From positions 62,001 through 126,000 of IMG/VR virus record IMGVR_UViG_3300035145_003993: a stretch of DNA of 64,000 bases. One strand, written 5' to 3'. The notes under the pieces are model-generated. The model made no database searches. It was not told the DNA's origin and was given only the letters and a program-made list of their open reading frames with translations. A program made the translations under genes and the position numbers. This document shows positions 3,001 to 55,557 of this stretch, piece by piece (the first letter of the stretch is position 1; the number at the start of each line of letters is the position of its first letter).

Positions 3001-4911
3001 GAAACCTGATGCAAAATCTGATGTTCTTTCAAAAGACCAAGGACTACCTACACTGCCTTTAGAAATAAGCTCATAAATTCCGTTATGAATTGCACTCGTT
3101 TGATTTTTAACTAAAATTCTAGAGCCAATAATAATATTATTAGGGTCAGATTCGTCTCTTTCAACAAGACTATTTACAGGATATCCGTCGATAGAACCGA
3201 GTTCACCATTAAGATTTGCTATAAGTGTTGATACATTTAATGTTGCATCCAAATTTTCTGTTGTTGCAACAATACAAGTATCTAAAACAGATGCAACTGA
3301 TTGAATTGTATTGTCAACGTATTGTTTAGTTGCTGCATCTGTATTCTCAATAGGCGCTGCAAGACCTCTTATGTTCTTGCTACCCATAGAAATACCAACT
3401 ACATCGGTACCGCCAACATTTATCGTGAGTTTATTTAAAGAATCAGAGGTGTCGCTTACAACATATCCACTAAGATCTGGAGATGCAGGTAAGTCTGCAT
3501 TTGTCAAAAATGATTGAGAATCAACCCACCCTTTCGTTGCAAAAATAGCTTGACCTGCAGTTTTTTCTGTATCTGTTAAAAGTGTTGAATCAAATGTGTA
3601 TGTAAAACTATTACTAGCACTTAGCGTTCCTGTAAAGAAAGATGAAGATGCAACTGATGCAATGTTAATTTCTTTATCAGCAGAGGATGCTAAACTTAAA
3701 GTCGGAATAGTAAATTCAGGGTCAGTTGCAGAGGCAAAATTAACTTTTAAATTATTTTTACTTAATTCAATTCCTTCACCTTCAGCAACACTGTCAGGCA
3801 AAAGTTGAATTGATTGGTTATCAAACAAATTAAAAGTGTTAAGATCAAGATGCGCACCTAAATGTGGGTCTGAGTCTTCAATTATAGCTGTTAGACCCGT
3901 AGAATTAAAGTCATTCCAAACAAGAGGACTTGTACCTAAAATAGAACCTGTTGTTGTTGACGAAGAAAAGAAAATCTTTCCTGCATTATCTGTTCCTTCA
4001 ATAACTGATACAGATAGCCCAGAGAAATCAATATCACCACTTAAGTCATCTGCTCTTGTTAAAACAAATTCTGTAGAACCATCTCCTGCAGCTGTTACAA
4101 TATAGATGCCGTTTTGAGTTTTGTCTGTTTGATCTTTGACTAATAATCTATCTTCAACTTGAAAAGCATTTACACCATCAATTAATAATGCACCTGGATT
4201 ATTAGCTGTAAGTGTAAAAGATAAACCATCATATGCTGCATCTAAGTTTTCTGTTGTTGCAACTTTTACAGGTGATTTAACAAGTAATAAATTATCATAT
4301 TTAGTATTACCATCTATTGTTAATGAAGGTGATGAAGAAACAGCAAATCTACTATCTTTTACGCTTAAAGATAACTGATTTCCACTTTGAGAAACTAATC
4401 TAATGCCTTGACCACTTTGTTTTGCGCTTCCTACATAAAGATTTCTAACAGCATCAACTGAGTTTCCTAAATCATATGTAACATCACTTGCAGGAACATA
4501 GTGACCATTACTATCAATATACCAACGATCTGCTTCATTGGTTTTAAATATTAACTTGTTATTTGTAGAATCGCTAGCGTCATAATTTGCTATAACTGCT
4601 TGTTGTTGTGTTGTTACATCTTCAGAATTAGTTGGACCTGCAAATATTCTATCAACTTCTGCATTAGAACTACCTGTATCAGATGCAGATATTGTGTATT
4701 GCGCACCTTCGCCTTCATCAGCAGCACTTGGTCCTTCAATTGTTATACCTGTGCCTGCTTTAAGCAATTGATTCCCTACTAAGTTTTTAAGTTCATTTGA
4801 CTTGAAATTACCAAAAGAACCACTTACTGCATTAACCTCTAACCACCTTCTATCAGATAAGCCTAACTTTCCTTCTTCATCTGCTCTAGGAACTAAGTTC
4901 TTTGTTGCCAT
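1..4911 (-). CDS. Giant virion structural/tail-fibre-like protein (>=1637 aa, runs off the left edge; absent from the supplied ORF track)
   Basis: ATG at 4911 with AGGAG SD; frame open in every line checked down to base 1. Starts MATKNLVPRADEEGKLGLSDRRW. Carries two copies of the fibre module V(K/V)ATTENLD...R(L/I)LVK(D/N)Q...NGIY (about 4260-3950 and 3310-2830). Confidence 0.8.
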   Translation of the reverse strand, partial: MATKNLVPRADEEGKLGLSDRRWLEVNAVSGSFGNFKSNELKNLVGNQLLKAGTGITIEGPSAADEGEGAQYTISASDTGSSNAEVDRIFAGPTNSEDVTTQQQAVIANYDASDSTNNKLIFKTNEADRWYIDSNGHYVPASDVTYDLGNSVDAVRNLYVGSAKQSGQGIRLVSQSGNQLSLSVKDSRFAVSSSPSLTIDGNTKYDNLLLVKSPVKVATTENLDAAYDGLSFTLTANNPGALLIDGVNAFQVEDRLLVKDQTDKTQNGIYIVTAAGDGSTEFVLTRADDLSGDIDFSGLSVSVIEGTDNAGKIFFSSSTTTGSILGTSPLVWNDFNSTGLTAIIEDSDPHLGAHLDLNTFNLFDNQSIQLLPDSVAEGEGIELSKNNLKVNFASATDPEFTIPTLSLASSADKEINIASVASSSFFTGTLSASNSFTYTFDSTLLTDTEKTAGQAIFATKGWVDSQSFLTNADLPASPDLSGYVVSDTSDSLNKLTINVGGTDVVGISMGSKNIRGLAAPIENTDAATKQYVDNTIQSVASVLDTCIVATTENLDATLNVSTLIANLNGELGSIDGYPVNSLVERDESDPNNIIIGSRILVKNQTSAIHNGIYELISKGSVGSPWSFERTSDFASGFQASGSFIYVEHGDTNKGNGFICTSDSNSDTVNTDDITFVKFSGAGEIQGGAGLTLTGNTLNINVKPDQIDDPANPGQLIANPDRFVYIDNEDNLDVSISNLVAALNDNGGITASAAADFTWPSTALSGDIASTDQFVMLDVSENPGAKKNVTAQKIKEHVLLTFDDSDISFTYDSARTNPWQAKYKDDSVLARHLDKSVISMQTIKVKVVDGVSIFKPDPGDFVLISDSNDSNELKRVSYSNFLSDLTVTPDFSSAPVLTEEELALDDKVLVLDSSNSDKVNTIPFSRVARKHDWIGVSGTGAGTSVRNNITLESDYTYIFSSRNNDTIEYTFTLPNTADELKTIEIIPVTHVNNVNDSNLGSAKVNIVLSTSKTCTYSWTDLQETSKLIFVYHNGSWRAKDEKKKRLHSYTQLVRPVNTNNTYNWGQVIALEERFFKFKDYYVFTNSEQQVTLNLPINNQINAWDNLSHNDSTRIYFLASGTIKKVTINSQGSIYKKLIGTTNSSNTSEFLVNQKVIQFNTSDIPYIDITWKKIWSNPVSGRGSEFSGWIISSPYNVEGQEAAFSLPTGATGDVLRYTEANTAEAGKVQTLNIENGAVTGGVDAQGTATGSIAATSIVGGNIANDTITNDKLKTMNNYKVLGSVTNDANADNDDPNNSVTEVNVLQSLDEEIAADNKHNNLVTAQAVRAFVLENSSQTLSSEPTSYDVYMNNVDDTFDNGNKPQSVSIFPSNINNVVNVNFVTLQCNYSGYAKNYSKSNYDQNTMLYGLKYDGGIDLIRDENYLGEIEWRNGKKINDHWDDPNKIGRDRDPLTGNNLSGFLPNRYGNSHVCLPESELWYSLYGPNTPLTLKVNFNTLDAQGVFRTNYKVFTVSFKPNPNDINSMCRLNPYTATQNSVQLNTLPAGRIPTYVNPHSLNSERHVDGRDYGLLPFNEGGILYSSSTGIYYNNNTSGDGGIYNAQDLNAYFYNDEVSSNINNPPSSITLKFYLKKVYNIRQFF

Positions 4912-9373: not shown

Positions 9374-10714
9374 TTAAAGTTTTTCTGCGACTATATTAGC
9401 TAACTCTGACCTATAGCCTCGAGTAAAATTAACATGACCTGTTAAACTTTCATCCTTTAACTTTTCGGTCACAATTGTTAAACCATTAGAAAATTTATTA
9501 ACATAAGGTAAATCAACTTGCTCTATATCACCTAAAAGTATTACTTTAGAATTTCTTCCAGTTCTTGTAATTACTGTTTTAAGCTCATGAACAGTAGCAT
9601 TTTGTGCTTCGTCTACAATTATTATAGAATCATTAAAACTTCTACCACGAATATGTGATAATGGTGCTACGTCTATTTGTCCTTTTTCCATCATCATTTC
9701 AAAATAAGTCAAGTCTCCAAATTGATTTCTAAAATTGTCAACAATAGGTGCAAGCCACGGTGACATTTTTTCGTTTAAGTCACCAGGCAAAAAACCAATA
9801 TCTTTCCCTACAGTTTGTATAGGTCTAGTAAAAATAATTCTCTTTTTAGTATTTTTTTCAATAAACTTAAGTGCTGTCATTAAAGCTAGATAAGTTTTGC
9901 CGCTGCCAGGTATTCCTGTAAGTGTTACAAGTGGAATTTCTTCATTTAATAATAATTCTAATGCAAAAATCTGTTCTTTATTTTTAGGCTCAATACCACT
10001 TTGTTTTTGTAGCTCTTGTTTTGTTTCTAATATAACTAAGTTTTTAGTATTTCTCATCATCAAACAAGATTGATTACTTCCGTTGTTAGCCTTTAAAATA
10101 ACAAATTCATTTTCACTTATATTTAGGTTATAACCGTTGTCAATAAGATCTTCTTTTATTTTTAAATGATTACCAGAATATGCTCTGTTAATAATATCTG
10201 AATCGACTAATAGTTCAACGTGTCCTTGGTATAAATTGTCTGCCTCAACAAATTCATAATCTGCGTAGTAATCATTTGCTTCTATACCAACAGCGTCACT
10301 TTTAACTCTAAGATTGATGTCTTTAGTTATAACAATAACTTTGTTTTCTTCTTCATTTTTATTAATGACAAAATAATTTGCATTAGAAATTATGATATTA
10401 TCATTAGTGTTTTTATCTAATCCTTCTAAACCTTCCCATGAAGATAAAGAACTTACTTTTAGATTTATATTATGTTTTTCAATAAAAACTCCAGTATTTA
10501 AACTGCCTTTTTCTCTTAACTCATCTAGAAATCTGTTGTAAAATCTTGCATTTTCCCCTAATAAACCTTCTCTTGTTTTAAACCGATCCATTTCTTCTAG
10601 GACAACCATAGGAATAACAATATCATTCCCATGCATGTTAAACAATGCATGCTTATCATAAAGAAGTACACTTGTATCAACAATAAAAGTTTTTCTGTTC
10701 TGTTTTTTGTCCAT
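9374..10714 (-). CDS. phoH: PIN domain-PhoH family ATPase (PhoH2/YlaK type)
   Basis: N-terminal PIN motif FIVDTSVLL...VLEEMD...ITKDINLRVK; Walker A GIPGSGKT; IGFLPG; RGRSF; IVDEAQN; GDIEQ. Confidence 0.92.
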   Translation of the reverse strand: MDKKQNRKTFIVDTSVLLYDKHALFNMHGNDIVIPMVVLEEMDRFKTREGLLGENARFYNRFLDELREKGSLNTGVFIEKHNINLKVSSLSSWEGLEGLDKNTNDNIIISNANYFVINKNEEENKVIVITKDINLRVKSDAVGIEANDYYADYEFVEADNLYQGHVELLVDSDIINRAYSGNHLKIKEDLIDNGYNLNISENEFVILKANNGSNQSCLMMRNTKNLVILETKQELQKQSGIEPKNKEQIFALELLLNEEIPLVTLTGIPGSGKTYLALMTALKFIEKNTKKRIIFTRPIQTVGKDIGFLPGDLNEKMSPWLAPIVDNFRNQFGDLTYFEMMMEKGQIDVAPLSHIRGRSFNDSIIIVDEAQNATVHELKTVITRTGRNSKVILLGDIEQVDLPYVNKFSNGLTIVTEKLKDESLTGHVNFTRGYRSELANIVAEKL

Positions 10715-45036: not shown

Positions 45037-46215
45037 ATGGATATTTCAAACTATCAATCAGAATATAATAATCTTGTAACTTTTGTTGATCTTATTGTTA
45101 ATAAAGGTAAAATAAAAAACAATAAAGATAAAAAAGAAAAATGGGCTTCGTTTAAAAAAGAAAACGAATCTGAAATTAGGGATCTCCTTAATATTCCTAA
45201 TGAATTAAAAGATAATCCTTGTAATCTTGTCAGTTTCGATATTGATGAAGAAAAAAACTTATTATTATTAAACTATACTTCACAAGCTCATAATGTTCTC
45301 CATGTTTATAAAAATGGATGGTCAAATGAACTTAAACTTTGTAGAGGGTTAGTTTTTTCTATTAAAAATAAAATTAAGTTAGTAAGTAGAGGATTTGAAA
45401 AATTCTTTAACGCTAACGAAACTAAAAAATCTCTTCAAGAAGAATTAACAAGAACTTACGATAAAGATCAATTATTCGATGCTTATGAAAAAATAGATGG
45501 TCACATGATAGAGTTTTTTGAACACGAAAATAAAATGTGTGCTACTACTCGAGGAAAATTTAATACTATATCTTCAAAAGAATCATTAAGTTTAATTTCG
45601 TATGAAGAATGGAATCAATGTAAAGATTATTTATTATCTAAGTATAATATAAACTTAATGACTATTGTAGCAGAATTAGTTACTCCATTTTCAAAAGTCT
45701 TAGTTGATTATTTCAATGATGAATGTGTTTACATATTAGCATCATACGACAATAAAGGAAATAAAATCAGTTATGACCTTTTAAAAGAAATATCAAGTTT
45801 TATTAATAAATCTAAATTACCAGAAAAGAGAAGATACACACTTTCAGAAATGTTTAAAGAAGTTACAAGAAGAGATATTAATAACCATGAAGGATGGGTT
45901 CTTAATCTCGATGGTGTCTTACTTAAATTCAAGTATAACAATTATATTGGAATGATGGTTAGTAATAAGATGTGTTATAAATATCTTATGCAAACTATGA
46001 TTAATAAAACAACTAATAAAATGGTTTCTACTTTAGACAAAGAATCTATAAAAGAAGTTGAATTACTTCTTAATAATATTGATCTTAAGATTACTGAATG
46101 TAAAACTATTTCTACTTATAAACCTTTATATGAATTATGGTCTGATGAGGAAGGAAGCTTAAACTACTTCAGATTGGTCTGTCGGAAATTTTACAAAAAC
46201 CTAATTAATGTGTAA
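45037..46215 (+). CDS. RNA ligase, T4 Rnl1-like
   Basis: LLLNY..CRGLVF..VSRGFEKFFN; motif I YEKIDG; AEL; motif IV EGWV; motif V LKFK. Confidence 0.88.
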   Translation: MDISNYQSEYNNLVTFVDLIVNKGKIKNNKDKKEKWASFKKENESEIRDLLNIPNELKDNPCNLVSFDIDEEKNLLLLNYTSQAHNVLHVYKNGWSNELKLCRGLVFSIKNKIKLVSRGFEKFFNANETKKSLQEELTRTYDKDQLFDAYEKIDGHMIEFFEHENKMCATTRGKFNTISSKESLSLISYEEWNQCKDYLLSKYNINLMTIVAELVTPFSKVLVDYFNDECVYILASYDNKGNKISYDLLKEISSFINKSKLPEKRRYTLSEMFKEVTRRDINNHEGWVLNLDGVLLKFKYNNYIGMMVSNKMCYKYLMQTMINKTTNKMVSTLDKESIKEVELLLNNIDLKITECKTISTYKPLYELWSDEEGSLNYFRLVCRKFYKNLINV

Positions 46216-53636: not shown

Positions 53637-53804
53637 ATGCTGCATAAAGTAGTAAGATTATTATTGAGTTTACATGGAATTTTTCACGTTATTGAAACAG
53701 CGTTAAATCTATATGAAGGTGCTTATCTTAGTGCAGCATTAACTTTATTCTCTTCGATTATCATGTTACTTGGAGCTTATATTGATTATGATCATCACAA
53801 GTAA
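53637..53804 (+). CDS. 55-aa membrane peptide
   Basis: MLHKVVRLLLSLHGIFHVIE...DHHK. Confidence 0.5.
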   Translation: MLHKVVRLLLSLHGIFHVIETALNLYEGAYLSAALTLFSSIIMLLGAYIDYDHHK

Positions 53805-53833
53805 TTATGTCACCATGATCATGGTGTCACTTT

Positions 53834-53905
53834 GGGATATTAGCTCAATGGTAGAGCAGTGGACTTTTAATCCATTGGTTGTAGGTTCGAGTCCTACATG
53901 TCCCA
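53834..53905 (+). tRNA. tRNA-Lys(TTT)
   Basis: GGGATAT/ATGTCCC; GTGGA-CTTTTAA-TCCAT; GTAGG-TTCGAGT-CCTAC. Confidence 0.95.
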
Positions 53906-53909
53906 TTCA

Positions 53910-53942
53910 GCATCCTTAGCTCAGTAGGAAGAGCAGTATACT
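53910..53942 (+). pseudogene. Orphan tRNA 5' half (acceptor strand, D arm, 5' anticodon strand to U33)
   Basis: GCATCCT-TA-GCTC-AGTAGGAA-GAGC-A-GTATA-CT; positions 34-36 coincide with the endonuclease stop codon. Confidence 0.75.
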
Positions 53943-54785
53943 TTACATATCAGAAAGATATTTTTTAACTAGTCTTCTTACATGAGTATGACTTATATCT
54001 AGATCTCTAGCAGCTTTAGAAACCCAACCCCAACACTTTTCAGTGTTTTTAATGTGATTTAATCTTGATTTAAGAAGGCTTTTAGCTTTTTCTTCTTTGA
54101 TTTTTAAATCATTTTTTCTTTTCGCTTTTCTTCTTTCAGACTTGTTTTTTCGCAATTCAAAGTCTATTTTAAAATTATCAAACTTATTCTTTCTTATTCT
54201 TTCAATTAAATTAGATAAAAAAGCATCATCGTAAACTTTTGAGTAATGAATCTCATACAACACCCAACCTTGTTCTTTAATTAAATCGTGCCTTTCTTGA
54301 TAATACTTTTTAAGAGACTTATCTTTATTGTAATGTTGCTCACCATTTACTTCTATTCCAAACATGACTTCAGGTATTGCAATATCAATAGAGAAAAATC
54401 TGTTTTCTAACGGCTGATATTCTTCAATGAAATCTATATTTTTTTTCTTAAGAAATTTCTTTAATTTTTCGCAAGGAATAGAATTAAATTTGTTTTTTGA
54501 ACGCCAAGGATGATTATCTGGATTTTCCTTAAGATACTTTTTTCTACTGTTAGATATTTTTTGTTTAAACTCTTTGGTATATACTCCTTTGTTAAAACAT
54601 TCTCGAGAGCAGTATTTTCTAACTGAGTTGGTTCTTGTATTTTTTATTGAAGTATTACAAGTCTTACAGAAAGAATCTTCAATGACTTTTTTATTTCCAC
54701 ACCATCTTTTATGATTGCCTGCTTCTTTTTTAGGTATCTCTTTTTCACATTTTTTACAATACATATTTATCCTTGGCTTGAACAT
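53943..54785 (-). CDS. Free-standing Vsr/DUF559-like (homing-type) endonuclease with N-terminal Zn-finger motifs
   Basis: CKKC..H..WC; CKTC..KYCSREC; SIDIAIP..GIEVNGEQHY..ERHD..QGWVLYEIHY. Confidence 0.8.
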   Translation of the reverse strand: MFKPRINMYCKKCEKEIPKKEAGNHKRWCGNKKVIEDSFCKTCNTSIKNTRTNSVRKYCSRECFNKGVYTKEFKQKISNSRKKYLKENPDNHPWRSKNKFNSIPCEKLKKFLKKKNIDFIEEYQPLENRFFSIDIAIPEVMFGIEVNGEQHYNKDKSLKKYYQERHDLIKEQGWVLYEIHYSKVYDDAFLSNLIERIRKNKFDNFKIDFELRKNKSERRKAKRKNDLKIKEEKAKSLLKSRLNHIKNTEKCWGWVSKAARDLDISHTHVRRLVKKYLSDM

Positions 54786-54861
54786 ATAATAAATATGATT
54801 AGATCAATGCTAATGCAAAATTAATTTAACAATAAATAAAAAAATAATAATATAATCGTAT

Positions 54862-54948
54862 GCCTTCTGCATCCCCACTGGTCTTCTAAGCCGGCCTCAT
54901 CAATCTAGGGGAATTGGAGAGTGTGAGGTTCGAATCCTCCAGGAGGTG
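54862..54948 (+). ncRNA. D-armless tRNA-like element with an Arg(TCT)-type anticodon loop and a possible 8/4 fold
   Basis: GCCTTCTG/CAGGAGGT 8-bp stem; CTGGT-CTTCTAA-GCCGG; long variable arm; GAGG-TTCGAAT-CCTC T arm; only 8 nt where the D arm should be. Confidence 0.55.
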
Positions 54949-54950
54949 CT

Positions 54951-54988
54951 TAAGCCCAAGAGTTCTGGTTCGAGTCCAGATAGGCGTA
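54951..54988 (+). pseudogene. Orphan tRNA 3' half B
   Basis: TAA-GCCCA-AGAGT-TCTGG-TTCGAGT-CCAGA-TAGGCGT-A. Confidence 0.7.
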
Positions 54989-55019
54989 TTGGTCGTAGGT
55001 TCAAATCCTACCGGGTGTA
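54985..55019 (+). pseudogene. Orphan tRNA 3' half C
   Basis: CGTAT-TGGTC-GTAGG-TTCAAAT-CCTAC-CGGGTGT-A. Confidence 0.7.
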
Positions 55020-55167
55020 CTACAAATACTTATATTCACGCAATCATATAAAAATTGGTGGCCTGATTTATTTAAATAGAAATTAAAATATTTTAAGTGT
55101 AATTCAAAATAAATTTTGATATAAATCTTATATACTTTAAAATAATTCAAAATAAATAGGATAAAAA

Positions 55168-55557
55168 ATGAAATTTTTAATTGACGAAGACGTATTATTT
55201 TCAACATCACCTCAAGAATTAAATGTAATTAAAAATAATCTAAGAAAAATTTTTTTAGAAATTCATGAAATAAAAAAGTGGAAATGGGAATTTTCTAAAG
55301 AAACAATTCAAGTTTGTATTAGAGATGGAAAATCATATCAAGACAATTCGGAACATTCAAAACCTACACTTTGGATTGCTTTAATTTGGGCTAATAGGAA
55401 AGGATCAACAAGATCTCCTGAAGAAGATAGAGAAATTTTTATTTCGAAAAGTACTATGTCTAAACCTTATTCTGAACAGAATGTATATACGTATCATTCT
55501 TATTCTGATTTGTTACAAAAATATAATTCAGGTAATTTAAATTTAATTATCAGATAA
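55168..55557 (+). CDS. Hypothetical protein
   Basis: Promoter 55097, AGGA SD. Confidence 0.6.
   Translation: MKFLIDEDVLFSTSPQELNVIKNNLRKIFLEIHEIKKWKWEFSKETIQVCIRDGKSYQDNSEHSKPTLWIALIWANRKGSTRSPEEDREIFISKSTMSKPYSEQNVYTYHSYSDLLQKYNSGNLNLIIR

What the first reader, a model, noticed from the sequence alone, without database searches (positions are those of the whole stretch)
53910..55019. Split-tRNA locus: an orphan 5' half, a D-armless Arg(TCT)-like RNA and two stacked orphan 3' halves
Seen: a perfect 5' half stops at U33 exactly where the antisense endonuclease ORF ends. Beyond the ORF, directly after a TATAAT (54851-54856), three T-arms are packed into 95 nt (54925, 54964, 54995), each followed by an acceptor 3' strand and discriminator. 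Half B starts in an anticodon loop with TAAGCC, the same word as the Arg loop upstream. The short 5' segment GTATGCCTTCTGCATCC holds overlapping strands able to pair with each 3' strand: GTATGCCT with B, GCCTTCTG with A, and GCATCC with C. GCATCC is also the start of the orphan 5' half (6/7 pairs with C or A). Established: anticodon nucleases cut in this loop, split tRNA genes exist in archaea, 8/4 tRNAs are described, and integration into tRNAs leaves displaced 3' fragments. Inference: either (a) functional half-tRNAs or alternatively folding tRNA mimics used as spare parts or decoys against anticodon nucleases, joined by the phage Rnl1, or (b) scars of repeated invasion.
Basis: partly seen in the sequence, partly recalled or inferred. 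Interest (0 to 1): 0.78.

Follow-up and report, generated by a model that had tools for sequence, protein, structure and literature searches.

The report
Broken tRNA-Arg gene, rearranged replacement tRNA
A phage arginine-tRNA gene was split by a selfish endonuclease gene that sits next to a replacement arginine tRNA of a structurally rearranged, so far unannotated type found in hundreds of phage genomes; the 'half tRNAs' are leftovers of the displaced genes.

Summary
It is not a split-tRNA system. Related phages carry, at the same position after tRNA-Lys, intact canonical tRNA-Arg(UCU) genes. Their 5' part matches the orphan 5' half, and their 3' parts match half B (one allele) and half C (another allele). 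Between the fragments lie a 280-aa free-standing homing endonuclease gene with a Vsr-like fold (closest solved structure I-Bth0305I) and the 'D-armless Arg-like RNA' (54862-54948). The endonuclease gene is present or absent as one clean unit among relatives.

That RNA is the interesting part. It belongs to a large family of tRNA-Arg genes with no D hairpin. Instead, the short linker after the acceptor stem pairs with a segment downstream of the anticodon arm. A D-loop-like GGA motif follows that segment. All helices covary. Members sit inside phage tRNA arrays in place of a canonical tRNA-Arg(UCU). Nearly all carry Arg anticodons, and most encode CCA. They occur, unannotated, in at least 345 GenBank phage genomes, and ARAGORN misses them. 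I found no description in the literature held here.

Best reading: endonuclease-driven disruption of a canonical tRNA-Arg gene, compensated by a rearranged tRNA-Arg lacking the target. Function as a tRNA is inferred, not shown.

The parts
53833..53906 (+). canonical tRNA-Lys(UUU); the conserved left neighbour of the tRNA-Arg position in all relatives
   Evidence: ARAGORN; Rfam tRNA 77.3 bits; Lys followed by Arg in L006, L007 and L008
53910..53943 (+). 5' remnant (positions 1-34) of a canonical tRNA-Arg(UCU) gene, cut in the anticodon loop after CTT
   Evidence: 26 of 34 identical to the intact Arg of L007 and 25 of 34 to L006; alignment of 5' halves; its acceptor strand pairs 6 of 7 with the 3' strand of remnant C (ARAGORN -i joins them)
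53943..54785 (-). free-standing homing endonuclease gene (280 aa): N-terminal Cys-rich part, Vsr-like nuclease core, C-terminal helical part
   Evidence: ORF; Pfam weak REase_MTES_1575 match; AlphaFold model top PDB match I-Bth0305I catalytic domain 3r3p, E 4e-4, TM 0.74, then Vsr; homologues scattered in 28 phage records, many beside or overlapping tRNA-Arg; absent as a unit in L401
54826..54856 (+). promoter-like AT-rich stretch (TTAACA, spacer, TAATAT / TATAAT) that would start transcription about at the first base of the rearranged tRNA
   Evidence: consensus scan, 9 of 12, not above chance in this AT-rich DNA; 35 of 36 bases identical in L010. Function inferred.
54862..54948 (+). rearranged-core tRNA-Arg(UCU) gene (ncArg). 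Acceptor 54862-54869 with 54940-54947 (8 bp). Linker strand X 54872-54876 with X' 54908-54912. Anticodon arm 54878-54894 (anticodon 54885-54887). Helix V 54896-54898 with 54919-54921. GGA 54916-54918. T arm 54925-54939 (4 bp). Discriminator G 54948. No encoded CCA.
   Evidence: covariance model built without it scores it 52.6 bits, E 4e-12; family covariation; not found by ARAGORN or Rfam tRNA
54949..54988 (+). remnant B: 3' part (anticodon-loop remainder to discriminator) of a second canonical tRNA-Arg(UCU) allele
   Evidence: 39 of 42 identical to the 3' part of the intact Arg gene L008:497-571; in L402 it follows the matching 5' half of the same allele across the insert; a metatranscriptome contig carries the intact Lys-Arg form
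54989..55020 (+). remnant C: 3' third (variable loop to discriminator) of the first canonical tRNA-Arg allele
   Evidence: 29 of 32 identical to the L007 Arg 3' end and 26 of 32 to L006; the same kind of remnant already follows the intact second allele in L008

Best explanation
The locus is a canonical tRNA-Arg(UCU) gene destroyed by a mobile insert. It is not a split-tRNA system.

Proposed history:
1. An ancestral Arg gene (type 1) after tRNA-Lys was overwritten by a second allele (type 2). This left the type-1 3' third behind (remnant C); L008 shows this state.
2. A cassette then entered the anticodon loop of the type-2 gene. It holds a free-standing Vsr-like homing endonuclease gene, a short AT-rich promoter-like stretch and a complete tRNA-Arg(UCU) gene of a rearranged structural class (ncArg). 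L402 shows this state.
3. The endonuclease probably cuts intact canonical tRNA-Arg(UCU) genes of co-infecting relatives near the anticodon loop. Repair then copies the cassette in. The old gene fragments serve only as flanking homology and persist as scars. The window's type-1 5' half next to a type-2 3' half fits such a recombinational transfer.

ncArg keeps the phage supplied with an AGA decoder and lacks the sequence context of the target.

ncArg is inferred to fold into a tRNA-like L shape. It has an 8+4 bp acceptor/T branch and a normal anticodon arm. The D hairpin is replaced by pairing between the 5-nt linker after the acceptor stem and a segment downstream of the anticodon arm. A GGA motif follows that segment and could play the part of G18 G19 A20, A20 being the main ArgRS identity element in E. 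coli (my own knowledge).

Shown: the anatomy, the homologies, the presence/absence of the endonuclease gene, and the family with its covariation, array context and anticodon restriction.

Inferred: endonuclease activity and target, transcription, processing, charging with arginine, decoding, and the three-dimensional equivalence.
For: Remnants:
- Intact Lys-Arg pairs occur in L006, L007 and L008.
- Identities are 26/34 for the 5' half, 39/42 for B and 29/32 for C.
- L402 has both halves of one allele flanking the same insert. L401 lacks exactly the endonuclease unit.
- The block of promoter-like stretch plus ncArg, B and C (54827-55023) is about 96% identical to L010, with sharply diverging flanks. 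It occurs in at least three genomic backgrounds.

Endonuclease:
- The fold match is to I-Bth0305I and Vsr.
- Its distribution is sporadic, and it lies beside or overlapping tRNA-Arg in T4-like phages.
- Homologues lie beside ncArg genes of other subfamilies in L080, L132 and L232. In L080 possible, degenerate 5' and 3' tRNA remnants flank the endonuclease-ncArg pair (judged by eye).
- In L232 the neighbouring canonical tRNA-Arg(UCU) carries a group I intron in the anticodon loop (Rfam 57.5 bits).

ncArg family:
- At least 46 distinct members came from a capped IMG/VR scan.
- They sit in tRNA arrays on the same strand as their neighbours. ARAGORN of 46, and 45 of 46 loci hold no canonical tct tRNA.
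- All helices covary: 97% of cells paired against 67% in shuffles, and the X:X' helix is 98.5% paired with double changes in 5 of 5 pairs. RNAalifold predicts the same structure.
- Anticodon-blind scans give 34 of 35 and 83 of 92 Arg anticodons.
- CCA is encoded in 27 of 46 members.
- 345 GenBank phage records hold it, with no feature under almost all of the 25 listed matches.
- The complete genome of E. coli phage Av-05 has 14 ARAGORN-called tRNAs, none for Arg, and one ncArg inside the array.
- AGA makes up 74% of Arg codons in the window.
Against: - There is no direct evidence that ncArg is transcribed, processed, charged or used. The metatranscriptome contigs covering ncArg and B are shallow (depth 3.5-6.4) and could be DNA carry-over.
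- The window copy lacks CCA and has two G-U pairs in the acceptor stem.
- Its single-sequence fold is no more stable than shuffles (z 0.61).
- The endonuclease's activity and target were not tested. Its Pfam match is below threshold, and the model is only moderately confident (pLDDT 67).
- Only a few family loci have this endonuclease nearby, so the link between the two is opportunistic rather than general.
- B and C are as conserved between the window and L010 as ncArg is. I attribute this to recent spread of the block, but it does not exclude a role for them.
- The alignment used for the pair counts was fitted to the model structure.
Confidence: 0.7

Rival explanations
1. ncArg is a structured tRNA-like RNA that does not decode. 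It could be a decoy or sponge for an anticodon nuclease, ArgRS or a modification enzyme, or a processing or priming element. The phage would then rely on host tRNA-Arg(UCU).
For: It lacks the canonical D arm, on which many tRNA-binding partners depend. It is missed by ARAGORN and, for the 8/4 type, by the Rfam tRNA model. An Rnl1-like ligase in the window suggests that tRNA damage matters to this phage.
Against: The family keeps what a decoder needs: a 12-bp acceptor/T branch, a 7-nt anticodon loop, a T loop and often an encoded CCA. It replaces, rather than accompanies, the canonical Arg(UCU) gene in arrays. Its anticodons cover several Arg codon boxes (UCU, CCU, ACG, UCG), which fits decoding better than mimicry of a single target.
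Confidence: 0.17
2. The fragments are functional. The 5' half and one of the 3' halves are joined, by splicing of a long intervening sequence or by trans-ligation with Rnl1, into a working tRNA. Alternatively the halves serve as spare parts against anticodon nucleases.
For: ARAGORN with introns allowed joins the 5' half and C across 1037 nt. The break is in the anticodon loop. Rnl1 is encoded. B and C are well conserved between the window and L010. The leader can pair with the ends of B and C.
Against: - No group I intron signal was found in the window even at E up to 10, although the same search finds one in L232.
- The joined product would have a mispaired 7-66 pair, an irregular anticodon stem and a non-Arg anticodon.
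- The intervening DNA holds an antisense ORF and a complete other tRNA gene.
- B lacks part of its anticodon loop.
- The 5' remnants of L010 and L401 are degenerating.
- The halves come from different alleles.
Confidence: 0.04
3. The arrangement is an assembly artefact: a normal tRNA array collapsed or mis-joined at repeated T-arm sequences.
For: Three T arms lie within 95 nt. The source is a metagenome.
Against: Independent Logan contigs of the source sample overlap across all junctions with no differences. The same block recurs in other samples and contigs: L010/L399, L400, L401 and L402.
Confidence: 0.01

Closest known systems
Free-standing homing endonucleases in phage tRNA regions (T4 SegB), and collaborative homing of a free-standing endonuclease with a neighbouring intron
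   Same: A selfish endonuclease gene sits in a phage tRNA cluster. It is present or absent among relatives and is flanked by co-converted DNA. SegB is reported as frequently associated with tRNAs (PMC13096335). L232 shows the intron-plus-neighbouring-endonuclease arrangement. The collaborative-homing concept is from my own knowledge of the cyanophage psbA case.
   Different: Here the insert lies inside a tRNA gene and destroys it, and it sits beside a structurally different replacement gene. The enzyme has a Vsr-like fold rather than the GIY-YIG fold of SegB (own knowledge). Its activity is untested.
I-Bth0305I / Vsr-like homing endonuclease family and 'fractured genes' (PMC2677866)
   Same: The best structural match of the ORF's core is this family. 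A free-standing endonuclease gene lies between two pieces of a host gene.
   Different: Fractured protein genes are rejoined by split inteins. Nothing here rejoins the tRNA halves. Sequence-level membership (catalytic motif) was not established.
allo-tRNAs and other 8/4 or 9/3 tRNAs (PMC5389517)
   Same: An 8-bp acceptor stem plus a 4-bp T stem and a long region between the anticodon and T arms. They are found in bacteria and their phages.
   Different: allo-tRNAs keep a D stem-loop (long stem, tetraloop) and are related to tRNA-Ser and tRNA-Sec. ncArg has no D hairpin, carries Arg anticodons, and also exists in 7/5 versions.
D-arm-lacking mitochondrial tRNAs, such as metazoan mt-tRNA-Ser(AGY) (PMC4013460, PMC7609411)
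   Same: There is no D hairpin between the acceptor and anticodon stems.
   Different: Those are shortened molecules with a small replacement loop, in systems with co-adapted factors. ncArg is longer than a normal tRNA (about 75-90 nt), keeps D-loop-like and D-stem-like elements at another place in the chain, and occurs in phages of ordinary bacteria.
Split and permuted tRNA genes of archaea and red algae
   Same: tRNA gene pieces break in the anticodon loop and lie apart in the genome.
   Different: Those pieces are transcribed and joined through defined complementary or bulge-helix-bulge signals by the splicing endonuclease (own knowledge). Nothing resembling such signals was seen here (no specific motif search was run), and the pieces derive from displaced alleles.
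Displaced tRNA 3' fragments left by integrating elements
   Same: Stacked partial 3' copies of one tRNA gene lie downstream of the functional copy.
   Different: No integrase or attachment-site duplication is involved. Whole genes or cassettes replaced the 5' portion by recombination inside a phage genome.

Membership tests
canonical tRNA (Rfam RF00005 / ARAGORN cloverleaf) - applied to 54862-54948 | 12-bp acceptor/T branch | tested here: met
   8 bp + 4 bp, all positions paired in the window copy
canonical tRNA (Rfam RF00005 / ARAGORN cloverleaf) - applied to 54862-54948 | 5-bp anticodon stem, 7-nt loop with U33 and a purine at 37 | tested here: met
   CTGGT / CTTCTAA / GCCGG; the stem covaries in the family
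canonical tRNA (Rfam RF00005 / ARAGORN cloverleaf) - applied to 54862-54948 | D stem-loop between positions 9 and 26 | tested here: not met
   only 8 nt lie between the acceptor and anticodon stems
canonical tRNA (Rfam RF00005 / ARAGORN cloverleaf) - applied to 54862-54948 | recognised by standard detectors | tested here: not met
   no ARAGORN call; no plus-strand Rfam tRNA match at E up to 10. Some 7/5 relatives do pass Rfam (L080 41.4 bits, L132 31.3 bits).
canonical tRNA (Rfam RF00005 / ARAGORN cloverleaf) - applied to 54862-54948 | aminoacylation and use in translation | not testable with these tools
   needs tRNA sequencing, charging assays and reporter translation
rearranged-core tRNA-Arg family (defined here) | match to a covariance model built from other members | tested here: met
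   52.6 bits, E 4e-12, full length
rearranged-core tRNA-Arg family (defined here) | linker after the acceptor stem pairs with a segment 3' of the anticodon arm, followed by a GGA motif | tested here: met
   TCCCC with GGGGA, then ATTGGA; the helix covaries
rearranged-core tRNA-Arg family (defined here) | Arg anticodon, position in a phage tRNA cluster on the same strand as its neighbours | tested here: met
   TCT anticodon; downstream of Met, Thr and Lys genes on the same strand
allo-tRNA (8/4, 9/3) | 8/4 or 9/3 acceptor/T branch | tested here: met
   8/4
allo-tRNA (8/4, 9/3) | tRNA-Sec-like D stem-loop with a long stem and tetraloop | tested here: not met
   no D hairpin; feature as described in PMC5389517
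split tRNA gene / intron-containing tRNA - applied to the 5' half plus C or B | a self-splicing intron or defined joining signal between the halves | tested here: not met
   no group I intron or other Rfam match in 53700-55200 at E up to 10, while the same search finds one in L232. Archaeal-type joining signals were not searched for specifically.
split tRNA gene / intron-containing tRNA - applied to the 5' half plus C or B | the halves fit together into a regular tRNA | tested here: not met
   5' half plus C gives a 7-66 mismatch, an irregular anticodon stem and anticodon TAG; 5' half and B come from different alleles
free-standing homing endonuclease (Vsr-like, I-Bth0305I type) | Vsr-like nuclease fold | tested here: met
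   Foldseek top PDB hit 3r3p, E 4e-4, TM 0.74; Vsr 1cw0 and 1vsr follow; the model core has pLDDT about 80
free-standing homing endonuclease (Vsr-like, I-Bth0305I type) | presence/absence polymorphism at one locus among related genomes | tested here: met
   present in the window, L402 and L400; absent as a clean unit in L401; sporadic in T4-like phages
free-standing homing endonuclease (Vsr-like, I-Bth0305I type) | catalytic motif of the family at the sequence level | tested here: inconclusive
   conserved D...E-x-N/D-G-x-Q-H block in 5 homologues; Pfam match below its cut-off; no PDB sequence match
free-standing homing endonuclease (Vsr-like, I-Bth0305I type) | site-specific cleavage of the allele that lacks the endonuclease gene | not testable with these tools
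   needs an in vitro cleavage assay

The most novel reading that the evidence does not exclude
The Arg-like RNA is a genuine, charged and translating tRNA-Arg of a widespread phage-borne class. In it the D domain is topologically permuted: the strand after U8/N9 runs straight into the anticodon stem, and the partner strand plus the G18-G19-A20-like loop come from the variable region. In the 8/4 subfamily this forms a pseudoknot with a variable-arm-like helix. The class would have evolved because canonical tRNA-Arg(UCU) genes or molecules are under attack, either by homing endonucleases at the DNA level, as at this locus, or by tRNA-directed defence nucleases at the RNA level.
Probability: 0.5. 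Interest if true: 0.9.

Novelty: new variant of a known kind. Interest (0 to 1): 0.8.

Why it matters
If the rearranged RNA is a working tRNA-Arg, the bacterial translation apparatus accepts an elongator tRNA whose D arm is built from a different part of the chain. That apparatus includes RNase P and Z, the CCA enzyme, ArgRS, EF-Tu and the ribosome. This is unexpected outside mitochondria and useful for tRNA engineering.

Phage tRNA inventories would also be systematically incomplete. The commonest phage-supplied decoder of the rare AGA codon would be invisible to annotation in hundreds of sequenced phages, including culturable coliphages, Vibrio phages and Acinetobacter phages. That would bias studies of codon adaptation and of tRNA-based counter-defence.

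The locus itself is a clear natural record of a homing endonuclease breaking a tRNA gene beside a target-free replacement. It links selfish-element conflict to tRNA structural innovation.

The family occurs in cultured E. coli phages, so all of this can be tested directly.

Tried and rejected
- **Group I intron between the 5' half and a 3' half.** Rfam found nothing in the window, either at gathering score or at E up to 10.
- **ARAGORN with relaxed thresholds or mitochondrial mode.** It produced only implausible overlapping calls made from T arms (Ser-CGA, undetermined) and the 5'-half plus C join.
- **Close relatives in the GenBank phage collection.** None covers the locus. Relatives came from IMG/VR and JGI metagenomes instead.
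- **MAFFT alignment of the family.** It misaligned the downstream strand. A covariance model built from a consistent subset fixed this.
- **Single-sequence folding of ncArg.** Uninformative.
- **Promoter and terminator scan.** Matches did not exceed chance in this AT-rich DNA, and no terminator was found.
- **Endonuclease sequence searches.** A PDB sequence search gave nothing, and PHROGs gave only families of unknown function.
- **RNA evidence.** Only Logan contigs of two marine metatranscriptomes were available. They hold the L010-type ncArg plus B at low depth. This is not proof of transcription.
- **Literature.** Seven full-text searches and three papers read found no description of this tRNA architecture. 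Subscription journals are not covered, so prior description cannot be excluded.
- **Not done.** I did not build a separate model for the 7/5 subfamilies. Their helices rest on a script-based segmentation.
Full report
**What is in the sequence.**
On the plus strand the window holds the following, in order:
- a canonical tRNA-Lys(UUU) at 53833-53906;
- three bases later, the first 34 nt of a tRNA (acceptor strand, full D arm, anticodon-stem 5' strand and CTT) at 53910-53943;
- a 280-aa ORF on the minus strand (53943-54785), whose stop codon overlaps the last base of that fragment;
- a 76-nt AT-rich spacer with TATAAT at 54851-54856;
- 159 nt holding three T arms at 54925, 54964 and 54995.

ARAGORN and Rfam see no tRNA downstream of tRNA-Lys. 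Independently assembled Logan contigs from the source sample (a wetland metagenome) overlap across all junctions without a difference. The arrangement is therefore not an assembly collapse.

**The fragments are remnants of displaced canonical tRNA-Arg(UCU) genes.**
The window is part of IMG/VR contig 3300035145_003993. Relatives found through the flanking small proteins have an intact tRNA-Arg(UCU) directly after tRNA-Lys (L006, L007, L008).
- The orphan 5' half matches the 5' part of the L007/L006-type gene (26/34 and 25/34).
- Half C matches that type's 3' end (29/32 and 26/32).
- Half B matches the 3' part of the different allele in L008 (39/42).

L008 already carries a C-type 3' remnant behind its intact gene. 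The stacking therefore began with one allele overwriting another.

L402, a 255-kb metagenomic contig, shows the next state. The 5' half and the 3' half of the L008-type allele are separated, exactly after CTT of the anticodon loop, by the same insert as in the window.

L401 has the same insert without the ORF. Its 5' remnant joins directly to the sequence that in the window lies about 10 nt upstream of the ORF's start codon. The roughly 855-nt ORF unit is thus a clean presence/absence difference.

In the ORF-less relatives the 5' remnants are decaying (27/37 with gaps in L010).

The block from the promoter-like stretch through the Arg-like RNA, B and C (54827-55023) is about 96% identical between the window and L010. 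The flanks diverge at once. The block occurs in at least three genomic backgrounds. It therefore behaves as a recently spread unit.

**The ORF is a homing endonuclease.**
- Pfam gives only a sub-threshold match to a PD-(D/E)XK restriction-enzyme family.
- An AlphaFold model was built on five homologues. Mean pLDDT is 67, and about 80 in the core.
- Its best match in the PDB is the catalytic domain of homing endonuclease I-Bth0305I (3r3p, E 4e-4, target TM 0.74), followed by Vsr.
- Homologues occur in only 28 of about 50,700 phage records, scattered over T4-like phages of five host genera. Many lie next to or overlap tRNA-Arg.
- Homologues also lie beside Arg-like RNAs of other subfamilies in unrelated contigs L080, L132 and L232.

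In L080 the ORF end overlaps the RNA gene by 33 nt. Sequences that look by eye like degenerate 5' and 3' tRNA remnants flank the pair.

In L232 the free-standing homologue sits next to a canonical tRNA-Arg(UCU) whose anticodon loop holds a group I intron (Rfam 57.5 bits, gathering score 50).

Together these point to the anticodon-loop region of canonical tRNA-Arg(UCU) genes as the target of this endonuclease family. This is an inference; cleavage was not tested.

**The Arg-like RNA (54862-54948) is a complete gene of a large family.**
A capped scan of IMG/VR searched for CTTCTAA followed 22-50 nt later by a T loop. It returned at least 46 distinct sequences with the same plan:
- a 12-bp acceptor/T branch, either 8/4 or 7/5;
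- only 7-11 nt (mostly 7-9) before a normal anticodon arm;
- an 18-37 nt region before the T arm.

In every subfamily, 3-7 nt of the short linker pair with a segment of the downstream region. Examples are TCCCC/GGGGA in the window, and CCTAC/GTAGG, CCCAC/GTGGG, CCCGA/TCGGG, CGG/CCG, CTC/GAG and CGC/GCG elsewhere. A D-loop-like motif ending in GGA follows directly.

A covariance model built from six members, not including the window, scores the window copy at 52.6 bits (E 4e-12).

On the model-based alignment of 39 sequences:
- 97% of cells form standard pairs, against 67% in shuffles and 38-52% when partners are slid.
- 22 of 25 pairs show changes on both sides.
- The linker helix is 98.5% paired, with double changes in 5 of 5 pairs.
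- A further helix that crosses it, making a pseudoknot in the 8/4 subfamily, is 81% paired although the model did not fit it.

RNAalifold predicts the same nested structure on its own. The alignment was fitted to the model, which favours the structure. The script-based segmentation and the slid controls argue that the signal is real.

**Evidence that the family are tRNA-Arg genes.**
- Members lie inside phage tRNA arrays on the same strand as their neighbours. ARAGORN calls only 2 of 46. Only 1 of 46 loci has another tct tRNA, and arrays reach 36 tRNAs.
- Two scans that do not specify the anticodon gave Arg anticodons almost exclusively. The 8/4 scan gave 32 TCT and 2 CCT among 35 hits. The 7/5 scan gave 60 TCT, 18 ACG, 3 CCT and 2 TCG among 92 parsed hits. 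Both scan patterns include the GGA motif, which may bias them toward Arg.
- CCA is encoded in 27 of 46 viral and 20 of 29 'genome' members.
- One 8/4 member finds 345 GenBank phage records: Vibrio 307, Acinetobacter 32, plus Aeromonas, Escherichia and Salmonella. Almost all of the 25 listed matches have no feature under them.
- In the complete genome of E. coli phage Av-05, ARAGORN finds 14 tRNAs in one array, none for Arg. The family member lies inside that array (79.4 bits).
- Members also occur in contigs filed as bacterial or archaeal genomes. Most of these are tRNA arrays in metagenome-assembled genomes, plus isolates of Brucella and Vibrio.
- In the window, AGA makes up 74% of Arg codons at 28.7% G+C. 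A UCU decoder is therefore plausible cargo.
- The conserved A after GG could correspond to A20, the main ArgRS identity element in E. coli. This rests on my own knowledge and is not tested here.

**How the locus most likely works.**
The endonuclease cuts canonical tRNA-Arg(UCU) genes of related phages in mixed infections. Repair copies in the endonuclease gene with its neighbourhood, including the rearranged tRNA-Arg gene. That gene both lacks the target context and replaces the lost decoder. The old gene pieces persist as scars and as flanking homology. The window's mixed pair of remnants, a type-1 5' half with a type-2 3' half, fits recombinational transfer between backgrounds.

The TATAAT 6 nt upstream of the first base would let transcription start at or near the mature 5' end. 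The promoter match does not exceed chance. B and C would then be a 3' trailer.

**RNA evidence.**
Two marine metatranscriptomes contain contigs covering the L010-type RNA plus B at depth 3.5-6.4. One of them also holds a contig with the intact Lys-Arg form. This is compatible with transcription but not proof of it.

**Rivals.**
- A non-decoding tRNA mimic cannot be excluded (about 0.17).
Still, the two substitutions that distinguish L010 in that putative leader:B helix both keep pairing. I leave this as unexplained.

**Novelty.**
Homing endonucleases in phage tRNA regions are known. So are fractured genes, 8/4 tRNAs and D-arm-less mitochondrial tRNAs (PMC13096335, PMC2677866, PMC5389517, PMC4013460, PMC7609411). 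I found no description of a tRNA whose D-stem partner and D-loop-like motif lie downstream of the anticodon arm, or of an Arg-specific phage family of that kind. The evidence is seven full-text searches and three papers. The library lacks most subscription journals, so this is absence of evidence only. I rate it a new structural variant of a known kind (tRNA), found through an otherwise ordinary endonuclease scar.

Noticed in passing
L232 (genome contigs MAG), minus strand about 4411-4695 and 3277-4353: A canonical tRNA-Arg(UCU) gene is interrupted in its anticodon loop by a roughly 225-nt group I intron (Rfam Intron_gpI 57.5 bits). A free-standing homologue of the window's endonuclease follows directly, and a rearranged tRNA-Arg lies about 85 nt upstream. 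This looks like an intron-plus-neighbouring-endonuclease (collaborative homing) arrangement in a tRNA gene.
   Followed up: partly
L044:3908-3994, L168:1606-1691(-), L185:2140-2226(-), L187:2981-3067(-): RNAs with the same rearranged 8/4 plan carry a GTA (Tyr) anticodon and lack the GGA motif. They score 43-54 bits with the Arg-based model. The architecture may therefore not be strictly confined to Arg.
   Followed up: no
L009:3230-3316, L010:3867-3953; L133 about 2703-2800 (E. coli phage Av-05): Unusually long (about 87-100 nt) tRNA-like genes with a TAT (Ile, AUA) anticodon and a long region before the T arm. ARAGORN calls some as tRNA-Ile(tat) of 87 nt. The Av-05 one is not called at all.
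   Followed up: no
window 54858-54865 with 54981-54988 and 55013-55020: The leader GTATGCCT can pair 8 of 8 (with G-U pairs) with the end of remnant B, and also with the end of remnant C. In L010 the two substitutions in the leader:B pairing keep it. This could be chance or a precursor processing stem.
   Followed up: partly
L080:2257-3159 with 3127-3201; L001:2487-3152 with 2426-2501; L132:723-1751 with 660-751: Endonuclease ORFs of this family repeatedly overlap the end of the adjacent (rearranged or canonical) tRNA-Arg gene by 15-33 nt, in sense or antisense.
   Followed up: no
L400 (Ga0098057_1031681), whole 1314-nt contig: This endonuclease gene looks like a chimera. Residues 69-280 are 76% identical to the window's protein. 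By eye, its N-terminus resembles the more distant paralogue that sits upstream of tRNA-Lys in L010/L015.
   Followed up: no
window 45037-46215 (+), 9374-10714 (-): An Rnl1-type RNA ligase (Pfam RNA_lig_T4_1, 56.5 bits) and a PIN-PhoH fusion protein are encoded in the window.
   Followed up: partly
source-sample run X1, 160-nt contig laid on window 54862-54950: A second variant of the rearranged tRNA-Arg (9 differences) is present in the same wetland sample, presumably from another phage.
   Followed up: no
L008:276-332: A damaged tRNA-like stretch (Rfam tRNA partial match, model positions 8-63, GTT anticodon) lies between Thr and Lys. It is another decaying tRNA gene in these arrays.
   Followed up: no
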